Shown piece by piece: positions 22,779 through 32,714 of a DNA stretch of 64,000 nucleotides. How positions within the stretch are numbered: position 1 is the stretch's first letter; each line of letters starts with the position of its first letter. Origin of the DNA: Ostrea edulis (lineage: Eukaryota); assembly GCF_947568905.1 (NCBI RefSeq), contig NC_079173.1:17670001-17734000 (forward strand). The letters run 5' to 3'. Position numbers and translations under genes: made by a program. The notes under the pieces were generated by a model. That model worked only from the letters and a program-made list of their open reading frames with translations, made no database searches and was not told the origin of the DNA.

Positions 22779-23874
22779 AATGTAAACCATTTTGCTATTA
22801 TTGTACGTAGATGTATATTCTTTAAAAAAAAAAACACCTTTCAATTTATTTCAATGAATTCGCAGTTAAGGGTACAAGTTCAATGTATGTGAAACAATTC
22901 ATTAACATTCAATATTGTCATTATAGTTTCTTAAATTATGATATTGATTTATTTGAGGTGAAAAATAAAAGGATCGTATAAAACTGCATATCAAATACAC
23001 TCTTTAAATGTGCTGGTAATAAATTTGAAACGGTTTCAAATTAAGGTTTGCATAATATTTCTTTTTATAGAATGCAGAAAATCAATTATTTTAACAATAA
23101 ATAATTATATGATAAGTTAAAAGCCTACACAAATCTATTTATATGTAAGAGTTGTGTATTTTGCATCGAAAAATCTATAGCTATGATGTAACTCTTTTTT
23201 TTTTTTTTTTTTTTTTTCTTTCATGAGAAAGAAACTTATAATTTGGTAAGTGTATACTTATCTATGGTGGGCTTGAAAGTGACGATATTTGAAATATTTA
23301 CAACGATGTGCCTGTAAGTGAGATCAGCTCACTGTAGTTCACTATGATACTCTACTTTCTACATCAATGTACCCTAAAAAAAAACCTTGCATCTGATTTG
23401 TTTTGACACTACATGTACTACCAATTTAATGATGCCTTTCTATATATGCAACCCTTTTCCATTTTGCACCGGGGGGCATATGTTTCTCAAACATTTCTTG
23501 TTAGAAGAGAATGTTAAATCTATTGCAATGCAATATTGTATTTAAAAAATTCATTTAATTCAAGTATAAATTTAATTAGTCTAACTCTATAGATTTTTAC
23601 TAGATTGATTAATATTAATTAATTCTATCAAACTATTTTAATTAATAACAAAAAACAGGTTTTCTTGACTTGAAAACTAATTTAGTGACAGTCTCAGATT
23701 AACATCTTCGCAAGCCAAGTGTCCGATTCGCTTACTCTCATCTACCCCTTGGCAGATTTAGTCGCGACTGAACTGCCATCTAATGGATCGAGCGAGTTAT
23801 CGTTCTTGAGGGAACCAAATACTAACCAATCAGATAACGCGTTATAAATTCTGGTACATGTGTATGTTTACAAA

Positions 23875-25909
23875 ATGGAGTTGACGGATGAAAAGAGAAA
23901 ACAGATTGAAGAGAGGTTTAGCATAGAGTGTTTGAGGGGAAATCAAGTAAATGGGATCAAAGCGGTTTGTAATGGAAAGGATGTATTCGTAGGATTGAAG
24001 ACGGGTAGCGGGAAATCTATGATTTACGAAAGCATTCCCGTCATTTGTTATGACGCTTGTGTCATAGTTGTGACAGCCCTTGTTTCCATAATGAAAGAAC
24101 AAACGGAAAGACTCTGCAAGCTAGGTTTCACTTGTACATATATTGGAAAGGACCCAGACGACGATGATGTGTTACAGGAAGGGGGATTTCAGTTTATTTT
24201 TGGCAGTCCGGAGGCACTGGTTGGCGAGAAGAAGTGGAGGGATATGGTATCCAAATTAAGAGAGAAAATTAAAGTCATCGTCGTGGACGAGGCCCACACA
24301 GTTGTTCAATGGTAATCAAGCTTGTTTATGACACCCCTCCCCACCAACATGATAGTAAATGTTTTGTTAAAACACAGGTGTAACTATATTTACAAAATTT
24401 CACCCTTAAATGAGTCATTGTTTACTATTCCAATCTACCTGCATCATATATACCAGGCCTCAAGTCAAGACCATAAACGGAGAATATATTCTTAAGTCTA
24501 AATTTCAAATCCAGCTACCTTTTGAAATAATTTTCATAAACAAATAATATTTTCAGTATATGTTTGCATTTGATCCCCCTATAAACCTGCAGTTTTACAA
24601 ACATTTGTGCAAGATAAATCTTGAAATATAATGAAAATTTTGATTCAAGTTTATGGTCTTGGGGCTTGATAATCTGAGAGAGTTAAGTGAGACATAGCAA
24701 GGACACATTTTAAATATACTTAACTGTATTTTTTTTTAATTTAGGGGTGAAGGAAATGATCACCATAAGGCCTTTAGGGAACATTTCAGTCAAATAGGAG
24801 AGTTGAGAGCAATTTGCCCAGACGTCCCTATAGCTGCCTTAACCGCAACATCAGGTCCTGCACAGCGTTGCAAAATCACGAAAAGTCTTTGCTTCAGGAC
24901 ATCTGAAACTGTGATCATATCAGAGTCTCCCGATAGGAAAAACATTAAAATATCCTCAATGTGTGTCCCTAACAACAGTGAAATTGAAGATGTAATGGGT
25001 TGGTTGTTGAATGAATTTGAAAAGAAAAAGGAAACACTTCCAAGACATATAATATTTTCAGAATCAATAAGTGATGTGTCTAAAATTTATGCAATATTTA
25101 GAAAAAGGATAGGAAAAAGTGAACATTATGAAATGTTTCATAGCAAAACAGTAGAAGGCAGAAAAGAATACATTAGGTCAGATATGACAAAAGATGGAAA
25201 AATTAGAATTTTGATATGTACCAATTCGGCAGGCATGGGTGTAAATTTCTACAAAGTACATAATATTATTCATTATGGCCTCCCAAGAGAAATGGACACT
25301 TTTGTTCAACAGATGGGTAGGGCAGGCAGGGATGGATAATTTGCGCATGAACTTATTATTTACAAATTCCACAAGGGACAATTAAAACGAGTTGAAGAGG
25401 AACTTGTTCAATTGGCTAAAGATTCAAAGTGTAGACGAGAAATTTTGTGTTCGTCTTATGGATGTAAACTTGAGAAGGTGATTCCAATGCATATGTGTTG
25501 TGATGTCTGTGAAAAAAGTTGCAAATGTGAACTTAACTGTACGGACACCCATCCAGCACTATTGTTTGAATTGCAAGAAGAAAATACGAATCATATGAGC
25601 CGAGATGTCAATTCAGCTGACAGGGTACTATTAAAGCAGAAACTAGATGCATTACAATTTAAACTGTCAAATTTTTCAACACTGATGAAATCAGAATTAA
25701 TTCACGGTTTGTCTAATGATGTTATACACTATGTTGTACAGCATGTTGATCAAATTTTTACACCTGAAGATATTTTGAAAAACTGTGCTGTATGGTCATA
25801 TGATGTTGCTAACCAAATCTCAAATGTTATCAATGAAATATTCGGAGATGATGTTATGTACAGTGTTTTAGATACTGAAGACGAAGATGAAGGTAACTAT
25901 AATGAATGA
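23875..25909 (+). pseudogene. RecQ-like SF2 helicase of the Academ element (2 exons, one in-frame stop)
   Basis: Exons 23875-24311 and 24745-25909 (GT-AG, phase 2). Motifs LKTGSGKS, VVDEAH, LTAT, TNSAGMGVN, QQMGRAGRDG, and C-terminal CRR..CCDVC Zn site. TAA at 25337-25339 is in frame; the ORF resumes in the same frame (~533 aa if repaired). Confidence 0.9.
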
Positions 25910-25936
25910 CATGTAAGTACATGTATGTACACGAAT

Positions 25937-29499: not shown

Positions 29500-32400
29500 T
29501 AACATCTACATCATGCAATAAAATTATATAAGTGAATTCAAACTGAAATATTAGTTTATGCGCTGAGAAGTAAGCATGTCCCACAGCAAACAATAAAACC
29601 ATTTGTCCTCTGTAGCTATACTGTATTAATGGACAAGGGGCCACATCACTCACTTGAGTGACCTTGGCCCTGTCGTTGGCAAGCAGTTGTAATTTTAAAA
29701 GAATTTTAATCAATATTTCTTCCCATAAAATTTTTTAACCTCTTATTTTTGGCCCCAACCTAGTCCCAAAGGATCACGAAATAACTGAAAATGAATTCAC
29801 ATAATACAGATGTGCCTCAAAACCAATATGACCTTACTGACTGTTCTGGTTAAGATAAGGGTCACATGGCCATAATTGAATCATTCAGAACCAAGCAATA
29901 TACAAAATACCACCCCCACCCAAATGCTGAGAAAAATCTCCTATTTAGTTTATTAAAAAAAAACAATAAATTTTTAAGGACTAAAAGCTCCAGAAGACAC
30001 TATACAATGGTAAAACAAAACTTGTAAAAAAATGTCTACCTGACATATTTGAAACCTTGAACTGTAACTTCAAATTGAACGTCAACAGGGAGTTAATTTG
30101 TTACCAGACATAGATTCATCATTCTATGCAGTCCTTCTGGCCTATGTATGACACCTGCTATCTGCTCAAAATCTGTAGCTCCATTTAACATAGCTAACTG
30201 TGCAGAATATGCTCTTTCATTTGTAAGAACATCCCCCCCAAATACTTTCTTTCGGATGACATGTGAGTGTGGGACATAATTCTCATGAATATGCTCCAAG
30301 ATACTGATCATATCTTCATTTTTATTTTCACTTTTGTCATGTAGATCTATTATCACAAAGTCAGATTTCTTGGATAATTCTTGCATGTGAGAATGTTCAA
30401 TACACTTGGGAATATATGCACCATATTTTTGAAAGCAGGGAAAATATTTCGCCAACACCTTCATAATATGGTGAACAAAATTATTTTCTAGGGACCTACA
30501 ATCTTCAATACTTGGAATGAATATGCTGTTCTCAGCTTCTGATATGGATGTAACAGGGGCATCTGTACTTAAGTTAGGGTTTAAAACCCTTCTCTGCAAA
30601 CCAACCATTAAAAACCAATGCCAACTTTGTCGCTGCTTCTCTTTGCTCATATGAGATGGACTTTTCATAATGTCGAAATTATCTCCAATGATTTCAGACG
30701 GCACGCAATCCTCACCTGTATTTTCTTCGAGGGCTTTCTTTTCTGAAATCATCAGTCGTTGTATGTGGTCAGTTTGCCTTGCTATCAAATCATACTTCTT
30801 TGCCGCAGCAGATGGTGACAAACAAAGACCCAACTTGTTGAAAAGATTTATGCACTACAAAACAAAATTAATTTATGTTCTTCACATAATAGAGCAATGT
30901 TTTATTCAAGACCAAACAACACCATGAATGCATTATATTGATATATATGTAATAGTTTTCTAAATGCAATGAAGTGAACAATTACAATTTTCTTTAGTTT
31001 CAGTTAAATGGCTTAATAATCTTCACCATTGTACCTCTAAATTATTCACAAGCACACACAGGTTTGTGTACGTCACGTGTGACAATGATGTATTAAATTT
31101 TGCATAATTACCTCATCCGTTGCTCCACCATTATCCAAAACTTGAGTTACTGCATGATGAAAGGCAGACATGTGCATAACTCGATTCTTTTGGATAACAG
31201 CAGCGATCACTGCCACTGCAACATGATTATGGGGATTGAAGAAACCAGATATTATCTTATACAATAATGGGGAATGTAACTGTAGCTCCAAATCCCATGA
31301 CTCGAAGTTAATCGTGGCTAACTTGTCACTTGATGTCTTTCTAAGACATGACATAGTCTTGGTAGATGAAAGCTTGTTCCTTTCTGAGATCTTTGATCAC
31401 ACAGTTATGGATATTGTCTTGTAAAGTGGAATTGTAGATTACTTTGGATGTTTTCTGGTGGGATTCACCCCTTGAAATACATCTAATGATGTTCTGTGAA
31501 TCTCCAGCAGGGATAACTTTGGATTTCAGCTTTTCTTTTGGACCTCTGTATACAACCTGTTAGTGAATCATTAATAATCCTCATTACTTAAGCGACTATA
31601 ACTAGAATCAGCATATATATTTTCACAAGAAATTTGATTTGTATCCGATGAAATTCTGAGACTTTTGAATACATAACCATACCGCCCCAACCATACATAT
31701 ATATTTTTTTAATTGTATGTTGGATAAAAGGTTATATCCACTACTTCCATACAATATTGAAAAGATATAGTTCTTTAAAACCAAATCTATTGGCTTAGCA
31801 TTTCTTAAAAATCATGACAACTGTCAAAAGCTGCAGTGAAATGCAAATAAGACTATAAAAAATATGAAATTTAGTGTCAGGTTTCAAAATCTGTTTTGTC
31901 CTGTGTACATGTTTACACAAAATATCAATCTATTTATGACAATGTATAATAAATCATACCTTGATTTTACTGGGAGAGAAAAGCTGAATGTTCACTTTCT
32001 TCCTGTATTTGTCGTCGGTCACAGGATTCGATGATGATGTTGGAGTATCCGTCAGCTGAGTGGACTTGGATTCAGTGAACAGCTGTTTTACTTTCCTCGG
32101 TGTTGGCGAGTGAACAATTAAATGTTTTTTGGATTTAGGTGTACATACTTGCTGTACGCTTATATCGCCCTTGTGCTTCAAGCGTAAATCGCGTATCAAG
32201 TCATGCCTTTCAGATTTTAACTTTTCTAACTTTGTTTTTATGTCGTATTCGATTTTACCCAATCTGTTTAGTTTATTCCAACACATACCGCAGATGTAAT
32301 TCCCTTTTTCGTCATTTGGGTGAGGAATCTGATCTATTATTTCTAGCAGTTGATCATACACGCCAAAGCTTTCTCCAAAGATCGTTCGTCTTTGTTTTTT

Positions 32401-32714
32401 GGGCAAAATTCCATGGCAGAGGCGACAACACGGGCTAGATATGGAGGTCGCCATTACTCAAACCGAAAGTGTATGTATGGCGCGATCTGATTGGATGCCC
32501 TGGAAAGTCAAAGCGCGATATTTTGAAAGCTTAGAAACTTGACTAAATCTGCCAAGGGGTAGATGAGAGTAAGCGAATCGGACACTTGGCTTGCGAAGAT
32601 GCAGATTAAAAGCTACATGTTTTGTTTTTATCAGAGTTATGATTTTATAATCATTTGTTGGTAATTTTGTTATTTACAGGGGACAAAAACAATATTTAAT
32701 ATCAGTTACATAGT

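What the first reader, a model, noticed from the sequence alone, without database searches (positions are those of the whole stretch)
23695..32609. Complete, young AcademH transposon with an 8-bp TSD and CATC- termini
Seen: 61/61 identical TIRs, exact 8-bp TSD cagattaa, a 2-exon RecQ-like helicase and a convergent 6-exon transposase, each broken by a single lesion (TAA at 25337; frameshift near 31385). Established: a RecQ-like helicase plus Academ transposase defines AcademH, a poorly characterised superfamily with no known role for the helicase. From recall, AcademH TSDs are 9-10 bp and many Academ ends begin TAG, as the MITE at 59996 does. Inference: this may be a distinct subfamily with different cut geometry, and a two-edit repair would give a candidate active helicase-assisted transposon.
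Basis: partly seen in the sequence, partly recalled or inferred. Interest (0 to 1): 0.75.

Follow-up and report, generated by a model that had tools for sequence, protein, structure and literature searches.

The report
Dead copy of young oyster AcademH transposon
This is a broken 8.9-kb copy of a recently active oyster "cut-and-paste" transposon of the already described helicase-carrying Academ type; its odd 8-bp target duplication is a one-off, because its sister copies all have the usual 9 bp.

Summary
The window has perfect 61-bp TIRs, an 8-bp flanking repeat, a 2-exon RecQ-like helicase gene and a convergent 6-exon transposase gene. The helicase has a premature TAA and the transposase a frameshift.

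The genome carries at least 10 near-identical copies (98-99%). Eight of the nine other copies with both ends readable have 9-bp TSDs, one of them with a mismatch, at the same CATC...GATG ends. The ninth has none. The family therefore makes the 9 bp expected of AcademH, and the window's 8 bp is an outlier, not a new cut geometry.

Both frame-breaking lesions are private to the window copy, as are two further in-frame deletions in the catalytic exon. "Two edits" therefore undercounts the damage. Some sister copies have all transposase exons open and others have the helicase open. No sampled copy has both.

Forty-one further loci in at least four diverged families keep the same helicase-transposase arrangement, so the helicase belongs to the lineage and was not captured.

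An RNA-like run shows four of the five modelled introns spliced. It shows only isoforms that lack the catalytic aspartates.

This scan has already noted other AcademH families in this genome (s1-287427, s1-287508). Verdict: a new member of a known kind, of modest interest.

The parts
23695..23702 (.). Left target-site duplication, cagattaa (8 bp)
   Evidence: The sister copies have 9 bp.
23703..23763 (+). Left terminal inverted repeat, 61 bp, starting CATCTTCGC
   Evidence: 61/61; 680 genomic matches of its first 29 nt, control 0.
23875..24311 (+). Helicase exon 1 (Walker A GSGKS, DEAH box)
   Evidence: Pfam DEAD, E 1.8e-13. The donor TG|GTAATC is seen.
24745..25909 (+). Helicase exon 2, including the natural TGA stop. 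It holds Helicase_C, motif VI (QQMGRAGRDG) and a Cys-rich RecQ-type C-terminal part. The unbroken gene has 533 codons.
   Evidence: Pfam Helicase_C, E 7.7e-17. Best PDB sequence matches are WRN, RecQ, BLM and RECQ1. The acceptor is seen.
25337..25339 (+). Premature TAA at codon 344 of 533, directly after helicase motif VI. Private to this copy.
   Evidence: All 8 other copies read GAA.
25937..26031 (.). 95-bp near-perfect palindrome between the two converging stop codons. It may be a bidirectional 3'-end or terminator element; its function is not tested.
   Evidence: I2, 40-nt arms, 98%; dG -41.5, z -15.8. Present in the sister copies.
26178..27022 (-). Transposase exon 6, including the stop. 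It holds a C2H2 zinc finger, the DG.R and KY motifs, and N..GG..I..D...E, which I take to contain the catalytic Glu.
   Evidence: Pfam DUF6589 positions 205-409; invariant columns.
27674..28142 (.). Two to three units of a high-copy ~150-170-bp tandem-repeat family inside transposase intron 5. It is a passenger, shared by all copies.
28464..28663 (-). Transposase exon 5
   Evidence: tblastn with P0002; splice sites; RNA joint 28663/28984.
28905..28935 (+). Internal TIR-like 32-mer (88% to the TIR tip) in intron 4, conserved in young and old copies. Its role is unknown.
   Evidence: I3.
28984..29105 (-). Transposase exon 4
   Evidence: RNA joints at 29105 and 28984.
30105..30854 (-). Transposase exon 3. 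It holds both catalytic Asp motifs (GDNFD and GGDxLTxER). It carries private in-frame deletions of 15 bp (after 30267) and 3 bp (after 30792), and an internal alternative donor CAG|GTGAGG at 30716.
   Evidence: Pfam DUF6589 positions 8-153.
31112..31556 (-). Transposase exon 2, with a private 5-bp deletion after 31375. The frame is lost at about codon 226 and stops at about codon 237 of 959.
   Evidence: RNA and DNA runs carry the undeleted GTTCA.
31960..32454 (-). Transposase exon 1 (ATG at 32454; zf-AD/ZAD-like C4 zinc module)
   Evidence: Pfam zf-AD, E 1.4e-6; RNA joint for intron 1.
32541..32601 (-). Right terminal inverted repeat, 61 bp
32602..32609 (.). Right target-site duplication, cagattaa (8 bp)

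Best explanation
Window 23703-32601 is one inactivated copy of a young, multi-copy AcademH-type DNA transposon family of an oyster.

Shown:
- 61-bp TIRs.
- A 533-codon RecQ-like SF2 helicase gene and a 959-codon transposase gene, converging on each other.
- A family-wide 9-bp TSD.
- Hundreds of TIR-bearing derivatives in the genome.

What the transposase is made of:
- An N-terminal zf-AD-like zinc module.
- A DUF6589 core. A full-length bivalve homologue of this core folds like DDE/RNase-H transposases that carry a helical insertion domain (P element, Hermes, RAG1).
- Conserved GDNFD and GGDxLTxER motifs in exon 3, and NIPND..VE in exon 6. The assignment of these as the D, D, E triad is inferred.

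Inferred mechanism: the transposase binds the TIRs, excises the element and inserts it at a 9-bp staggered cut. The RecQ-like helicase co-evolves with the transposase. It most likely helps in DNA-end processing or in repair of the donor gap by synthesis-dependent strand annealing, as cellular BLM does after P-element excision (from my own knowledge).

The window copy cannot supply either protein. The helicase stops at codon 344. The transposase is frameshifted at about codon 226 and carries two further in-frame deletions. It could still be moved in trans.

Its 8-bp duplication is either a rare 8-bp staggered cut or a 9-bp TSD that later lost one A. It is not a family trait.
For: Structure and lesions.

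Family and age: at least 10 copies at 98-99% identity. Pairwise K2P is about 1%, and one trio is at 0.1-0.2%.

TSD table:
- 9 bp exact at C6:9964042, C2:42386361, C7:9519000, C9:22065408, C4:12107931, C2:2959730 and C1:27816233.
- 9 bp with one mismatch at the old copy C2:1300310.
- None at C3:49076618.
- 8 bp only in the window.

Printed rule: AcademH makes 9-10-bp TSDs and AcademX 3-4 bp (PMC10045372).

Helicase: best PDB sequence matches are WRN, RecQ, BLM and RECQ1, E 1e-15 to 1e-7.

Transposase:
- 1198 relatives at E<=0.001.
- Full-length relatives in Pinctada and Argopecten.
- Invariant motifs.
- AlphaFold model of P0002, pLDDT 75.8 overall and mostly above 85 over the core.
- Top 24 structural matches are all DDE transposases: P element Z 10.0 (356 aligned, rmsd 6.0), Hermes Z 9.2, RAG1 about Z 7, ISCth4 Z 6.7.

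Lineage: 41 further loci in at least four families keep helicase and transposase convergent, 2.5-11 kb apart. Transposase identity runs from 65% to 30% and helicase identity from 50% to 32%.

Taxa: DUF6589 clusters are mainly Basidiomycota and Mollusca. Academ is amplified in bivalves (PMC10294476) and in rusts (PMC5751038).

Expression: an RNA-like run covers the exons only, with GT..AG joints at introns 1, 2 and 4 exactly and at intron 5 within 1-2 nt. None of these joints is in the DNA runs.
Against: - No direct comparison with Repbase or Dfam Academ sequences was possible. Kojima 2020 and Yuan & Wessler 2011 are not held. The step 'DUF6589 = Academ transposase' therefore rests on architecture, TSD length and taxonomic distribution.
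- The DDE assignment comes from conservation and from a homologue's model. It is not from this copy or from an experiment.
- No sampled copy has both genes open.
- The only RNA evidence shows isoforms that lack the catalytic aspartates. It comes from contigs of a run labelled as another organism, about 2% different from the window.
- The role of the helicase is pure inference.
Confidence: 0.85

Rival explanations
1. One reading: a distinct Academ subfamily whose transposase makes 8-bp staggered cuts at CATC termini.
For: The window copy has an exact 8-bp duplication that cannot be extended.
Against: Eight of the nine other copies with both ends show 9 bp at the very same termini, one of them with a mismatch. 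This includes copies 99% identical to the window.
Confidence: 0.03
2. The window insertion made a normal 9-bp TSD (cagattaaa), and the left copy later lost one A from its A-run. On this reading the 8 bp is a post-insertion mutation and not a cutting variant.
For: The right flank reads cagattaa+a, so both readings give the same empty site. This copy has an unusual load of private deletions: 8, 15, 3, 5, 1 and 1 bp.
Against: About 7 private indels in 8.9 kb predict only about a 1-2% chance of one falling in the 18 bp of the TSDs (my estimate). TSD length already varies between 9 and 10 bp within AcademH. A one-off 8-bp cut is therefore at least as likely.
Confidence: 0.3
3. It is a member of another superfamily that captured a host RecQ gene: a Mutator-like element (also 9-bp TSDs and long TIRs) or a Kolobok-H-like element.
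For: MuDR elements make 9-bp TSDs (from my own knowledge). KolobokH and Kolobok-1_CCri encode RecQ helicases (PMC9587614). ISCth4 is among the structural matches.
Against: - No MULE, SWIM or THAP Pfam match, even at E<=1. The only transposase family hit is DUF6589.
- From my own knowledge (no paper held here was read for it), Kolobok makes 4-bp TTAA TSDs; here the TSD is 9 bp.
- The helicase is linked to the transposase in 41 loci of diverged families, with parallel divergence. That argues against a recent capture.
Confidence: 0.04
4. The truncated transcripts are the family's normal products, and the family is self-repressed or already domesticated. On this reading it is not currently mobile.
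For: The RNA-like run has zero depth over the 3' 611 nt of exon 3. It shows only joints 30716>29105 (frame lost, stop after 375 codons) and 31960>29105 (in frame, 553 codons). Both lack the Asp motifs.
Against: - Three copies differ by only 0.1-0.2% and sit at different sites with their own 9-bp TSDs, so the family was mobile recently.
- This is one run of contigs, and contigs drop rare isoforms.
- The tissue is unknown.
Confidence: 0.2

Closest known systems
AcademH lineage of the Academ superfamily (Kojima 2020, Mobile DNA 11:15; cited through PMC10045372 and PMC10799480)
   Same: A transposase plus a separate SF2/RecQ-like helicase gene inside TIRs. TSDs of 9-10 bp. Found in animals and fungi. 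Low to moderate copy number.
   Different: No defining feature differs. This copy has 8 bp instead of 9, and its ends start CATC. Whether this family is already in Repbase could not be checked.
Other AcademH-type families in the same oyster genome (scan notes s1-287427 at 11.4 kb and s1-287508 at 10.7 kb; 41 loci)
   Same: The same convergent helicase-transposase layout and the same DUF6589 core.
   Different: The nearest other family found is only 65% (transposase exon 3) and 50% (helicase exon 2) identical. This family is shorter, at 8.9 kb. One of the noted families was reported with a 10-bp TSD; I did not check that.
Drosophila P element transposase
   Same: It is the best structural match of the homologue's core (Z 10.0): a DDE RNase-H fold with an inserted domain. 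Alternative splicing may give truncated proteins (P-element biology from my own knowledge).
   Different: No sequence similarity. No THAP or GTP-binding domain is detected. The TSD is 9 bp, against 8 bp for P. P has no helicase gene.
KolobokH / Kolobok-1_CCri (PMC9587614)
   Same: DDE transposons that also carry a RecQ helicase.
   Different: From my own knowledge (not read in a paper held here), Kolobok makes 4-bp TTAA TSDs, whereas this family makes 9 bp. [quoted passage not shown] The transposase family is different.
Mutator-like elements (MuDR)
   Same: Long TIRs and 9-bp TSDs.
   Different: No match to the MULE transposase or SWIM domains. A helicase gene is present.

Membership tests
AcademH (Academ superfamily) | The transposase is homologous to Repbase Academ transposases. 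| not testable with these tools
   No Repbase or Dfam is on hand, and the defining papers are not held. Indirect evidence only:
- Pfam DUF6589.
- DUF6589's Basidiomycota and Mollusca range parallels the published Academ range.
AcademH (Academ superfamily) | A helicase is encoded in addition to the transposase, inside the TIRs. | tested here: met
   DEAD plus Helicase_C on the + strand at 23875-25909. RecQ-family PDB matches.
AcademH (Academ superfamily) | TSD of 9 or 10 bp (PMC10045372). | tested here: met
   The family has 9 bp in 7 copies exactly and in 1 more with one mismatch. One copy has none. The window copy alone has 8 bp.
AcademH (Academ superfamily) | The helicase is a stable part of the lineage and not a one-off capture. 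| tested here: met
   41 further loci in at least 4 diverged families have the same convergent pair. Identities fall in parallel.
AcademH (Academ superfamily) | Occurs in animals and fungi. | tested here: met
   Relatives in Pinctada imbricata and Argopecten irradians. Atlas clusters are Basidiomycota and Mollusca.
DDE/RNase-H cut-and-paste transposases | An RNase-H-like catalytic fold with a D, D, E triad. | tested here: met
   Tested on the 1065-aa homologue P0002, not on the window protein. The top 24 structural matches are DDE transposases, with Z up to 10.0. Acidic motifs are invariant. Catalysis was not tested.
RecQ-family helicases | SF2 motifs I-VI with a RecQ-type motif VI and a Zn-binding Cys cluster. 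| tested here: met
   GSGKS, DEAH, QQMGRAGRDG and a CRR...CCDVC cluster are read from the translation. WRN, RecQ and BLM are the best matches. No RQC, HRDC or RecQ_Zn_bind Pfam hit at E<=1.
Kolobok (incl. KolobokH) | 4-bp (TTAA) TSD (the Kolobok rule is from my own knowledge, not read in a paper held here). | tested here: not met
   The TSD is 9 bp.
MuDR / MULE | A MULE-type transposase domain, often with a SWIM finger. | tested here: not met
   No such Pfam hit at E<=1 on any exon. The 9-bp TSD alone would fit.

The most novel reading that the evidence does not exclude
This AcademH family may regulate itself by alternative splicing, with its RecQ helicase serving donor-gap repair.

Splicing: an internal donor in the catalytic exon, or skipping of exons 2-3, gives DNA-binding proteins that lack the catalytic aspartates. 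That is the P-element and En/Spm logic.

Helicase: its function would be to drive repair of the emptied donor site by synthesis-dependent strand annealing. The many 66-90-bp TIR-only foldback elements would then be the scars of aborted repair.

If so, the family would be a natural system in which the unknown role of the Academ helicase could be tested.
Probability: 0.2. Interest if true: 0.6.

Novelty: new member of a known kind. Interest (0 to 1): 0.3.

Why it matters
AcademH is a described but experimentally untouched superfamily lineage, and nobody knows what its helicase does.

This oyster family is young: some copies are 0.1-0.2% apart. It has natural copies with open transposase exons and other copies with open helicase genes. 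It also has hundreds of TIR-bearing derivatives, and it is transcribed. It is therefore a reasonable source of material for a first functional test.

The window copy adds nothing special. It is a dead member, and its unusual 8-bp duplication does not reflect a new enzyme property.

Tried and rejected
- Kojima 2020 (PMC7165386) and Yuan & Wessler 2011 could not be read by PMC id or DOI.
The neighbourhood of foreign homologues could not be checked, so I used within-genome co-location instead.
- Foldseek alone gave no match at E<=0.001. Only the VIA-align re-scoring separated the transposases.
- Rfam gave only a sub-threshold miRNA-precursor hit on the palindrome: 44.8 bits against a gathering score of 90. 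I rejected it.
- TRF found no tandem array in the element beyond a 16-bp duplication.
- No subterminal repeats were found in the ends.
- Whether the window insertion is polymorphic could not be settled. Reads at 32601 run into many different flanks, coming from the other copies and the MITEs.
Exons were searched one by one by reference, and the homologue P0002 stood in for the whole protein. Exons of a sister copy were joined only inside one script to count frames.
- The costly word-index protein search was not used.

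
Full report
**1. What is there**

The two arms 23703-23763 and 32541-32601 are 61 nt long and 100% complementary. Directly outside them lies cagattaa on both sides, at 23695-23702 and 32602-32609. The neighbouring bases differ, so the repeat is exactly 8 bp. A 29-nt probe from the TIR tip matches only these two places in the window, against 0 expected. It matches 680 places in the whole genome, against 0 for the reversed control.

**2. Genes**

*Helicase.* On the + strand, Pfam finds DEAD (E 1.8e-13) and Helicase_C (E 7.7e-17).
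- The splice sites can be read directly. Exon 1 (23875-24311) ends ...CAA TG|GTAATC. The intron ends ...TTTAG|G at 24744. Exon 2 runs to the TGA at 25907-25909. That makes 533 codons.
- The translation shows GSGKS, DEAH, QQMGRAGRDG and a CRR...CCDVC cysteine cluster.
- The best sequence matches among solved structures are WRN, bacterial RecQ, BLM and RECQ1.
- 'RecQ-like' is therefore justified, although no RQC or HRDC domain is detected.

*Transposase.* On the - strand, Pfam finds zf-AD in the first exon and DUF6589 in two exons.
- A whole-library HMMER search with the last exon found 1198 relatives.
- The full-length relative P0002 (1065 aa) aligns exon by exon at 44-59% identity.
- With it I placed six exons, all with GT..AG introns: 32454-31960, 31556-31112, 30854-30105, 29105-28984, 28663-28464 and 27022-26181, with the stop at 26180-26178.
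- In unbroken sister copies this gives 959 codons.

**3. The family, and the TSD question**

The genome is 895 Mb in 52 contigs. Sequencing-run labels say oyster. Earlier notes of this scan call it the flat oyster, which I did not verify.

It holds four more full-length copies at 98-99% identity. It also holds several internally deleted or truncated copies and two old copies at 86-93%.

I fetched the copies with their flanks and read the junctions:
- Exact 9-bp duplications at C6:9964042, C2:42386361, C7:9519000, C9:22065408, C4:12107931, C2:2959730 and the 1.1-kb derivative at C1:27816233.
- Nine bp with one mismatch at the old copy C2:1300310.
- None at C3:49076618.

All have the same CATC...GATG tips. 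A paper by the author of the AcademH description states that AcademH makes 9- or 10-bp TSDs and AcademX 3- or 4-bp (PMC10045372). The family is thus a typical 9-bp AcademH, and the window copy is the single exception.

The right flank reads cagattaa followed by a. A 9-bp TSD cagattaaa that lost one A on the left therefore gives the same empty site as a true 8-bp cut, and the two cannot be told apart here. From about 7 private indels in 8.9 kb, I estimate only a 1-2% chance that one fell in the TSDs. I therefore lean to a rare 8-bp cut, at roughly 2:1. Either way, no 'different cut geometry' defines this family.

**4. The lesions**

In an alignment of nine copies, four coding lesions are found in the window copy only:
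- The TAA at 25337 (GAA elsewhere).
- A 5-bp deletion after 31375, which is the frameshift.
- A 15-bp deletion after 30267.
- A 3-bp deletion after 30792.

Undeleted forms turn up in all four sequencing runs. All four runs carry the undeleted GTTCA at 31375, three carry the extra 3 bp near 30792, and two carry the 15 bp at 30267.

The helicase would stop at codon 344, just after motif VI. The transposase loses its frame at about codon 226. The copy also has 21 private substitutions. 'Two edits' therefore understates the damage.

Exon-by-exon status of the other copies:
- All six transposase exons are open, with intact splice sites, in C2:42.39M, C7:9.52M and the 5'-truncated C5:82.28M.
- The helicase is open in C3:49.08M, C9:22.07M and C4:12.11M.
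- No sampled copy has both genes open.

Pairwise K2P distances are about 1%. One trio (C2:42.39M, C7:9.52M, C3:49.08M) is only 0.12-0.23% apart, so the family moved very recently.

**5. Is it AcademH?**

I could not compare it with Repbase. The evidence is indirect but convergent:
- (a) The layout is a helicase plus a transposase inside TIRs.
- (b) The TSD is 9 bp.
- (c) Searching the genome with transposase exon 3 and helicase exon 2 shows 41 further loci in at least four diverged families. In each, the two genes lie 2.5-11 kb apart and convergent. Identities fall together, from 65/50% down to about 30/32%. The helicase is an old, co-evolving part of the lineage, which is what defines AcademH.
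- (d) DUF6589 clusters are mainly basidiomycete and molluscan, and the nearest full-length relatives are from pearl oyster and scallop. This matches the published Academ range: rust fungi and a bivalve-specific expansion with 100 curated families.
- (e) Kolobok is excluded, because by my own knowledge (not read in a paper held here) it makes 4-bp TTAA TSDs and this family makes 9 bp. MULE is excluded by the lack of its domains.

**6. How it most likely works**

Thirteen long homologues aligned with the exons of an open sister copy give invariant motifs: GDNFD and GGDxLTxER in exon 3, and a C2H2 finger, DG.R, KY and N..GG..I..D...E in exon 6.

An AlphaFold model of P0002 has a mean pLDDT of 75.8, and mostly above 85 from residue 270 on. 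Its 24 best structural matches are all DDE transposases with an insertion domain. These are P element (Z 10.0, 356 residues aligned, rmsd 6.0), Hermes (Z 9.2), RAG1 (about Z 7) and ISCth4 (Z 6.7). Foldseek alone was not significant.

I therefore read the protein as a DDE cut-and-paste transposase whose triad is split between exons 3 and 6. That reading is inferred. The helicase's role is unknown in the literature. My best guess is help with end processing or with SDSA repair of the donor gap.

A hint in that direction comes from the TIR probe hits. Among the first 100 exact hits, 14 are facing pairs spanning only 66-90 bp. The one I could read is TIR nt 1-32 joined to the reverse complement of TIR nt 1-38. 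That is the product expected when repair synthesis from both ends aborts early. These could also be tiny MITEs, since the 82-bp size recurs four times.

**7. Expression**

In contigs of a run that behaves as RNA, depth sits on the exons and is near zero in introns 1, 3 and 5. GT..AG joints fall exactly at introns 1, 2 and 4, and within 1-2 nt at intron 5. None of these joints appears in the three DNA runs.

Modelled intron 3 is not seen. Instead, exon 4 is joined to an internal donor CAG|GTGAGG at 30716 or directly to exon 1. Depth over 30050-30649 is zero. Both isoforms lack the two Asp motifs. The first shifts frame and stops after 375 codons. The second stays in frame for 553 codons.

The contigs differ from the window by about 2% and come from a differently labelled organism. 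This shows that a sister family is transcribed and spliced. It does not show that the window copy is. Whether a full-length mRNA exists is open.

**8. Verdict**

The classification is supported. The novelty claim (new cut geometry) is refuted, and the repair idea is understated and unnecessary.

This scan has already followed up two other AcademH families in this genome (s1-287427, s1-287508). This is a further, shorter family. It is a new member of a known kind, with modest interest that comes mainly from the family's youth and from the splicing and micro-element side observations.

Noticed in passing
G000 coordinates (e.g. C1:8471580-8471661, C1:94287434-94287499); L044:1535-1604: There are many TIR-only foldback micro-elements of 66-90 bp, made of two facing TIR tips. 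The one that could be read is TIR nt 1-32 plus the reverse complement of TIR nt 1-38. They look like aborted gap-repair scars or tiny MITEs. The 82-bp size recurs four times.
   Followed up: partly
G000 C2:64590339-64591005 and C2:58851859-58852526: MITEs of about 668 bp whose terminal 88 nt are 91-92% identical to this element's end. They are probably non-autonomous relatives mobilised by the same or a sister transposase.
   Followed up: no
window 27674-28142 (transposase intron 5): Two to three units of a ~150-170-bp tandem-repeat family. In raw reads it has more than 20 times the element's depth. It shows many period-sized joints and very high depth in the RNA-like run. All copies of the element carry it.
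   Followed up: partly
window 25937-26031: A 95-bp near-perfect palindrome sits between the converging stop codons of the two genes (dG -41.5 kcal/mol, z -15.8). It shares the 11-mer CTCATCTACCC with the TIR. The only Rfam hit is a sub-threshold miRNA-precursor match.
   Followed up: partly
window 28905-28935: A TIR-like 32-mer (88% to the TIR tip, in the same orientation as the left end) lies inside intron 4. It is conserved even in the 86-93% old copies. No copy was seen to use it as an end.
   Followed up: partly
window 30716 and 31960 joined to 29105 (RNA-like run X19): Alternative transposase transcripts drop the catalytic part of exon 3 or the whole of exons 2-3. No contig covers 30105-30715.
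   Followed up: partly
L034 (G000 C3:49076618-49085509): This very young full-length copy has an open helicase gene but no target-site duplication at all. It may have arisen by recombination between copies or by a flank deletion.
   Followed up: no
Its link to Academ was not tested.
   Followed up: no
window 9640-9769: A run of 130 N (a gap or masked stretch). Left untouched.
   Followed up: no
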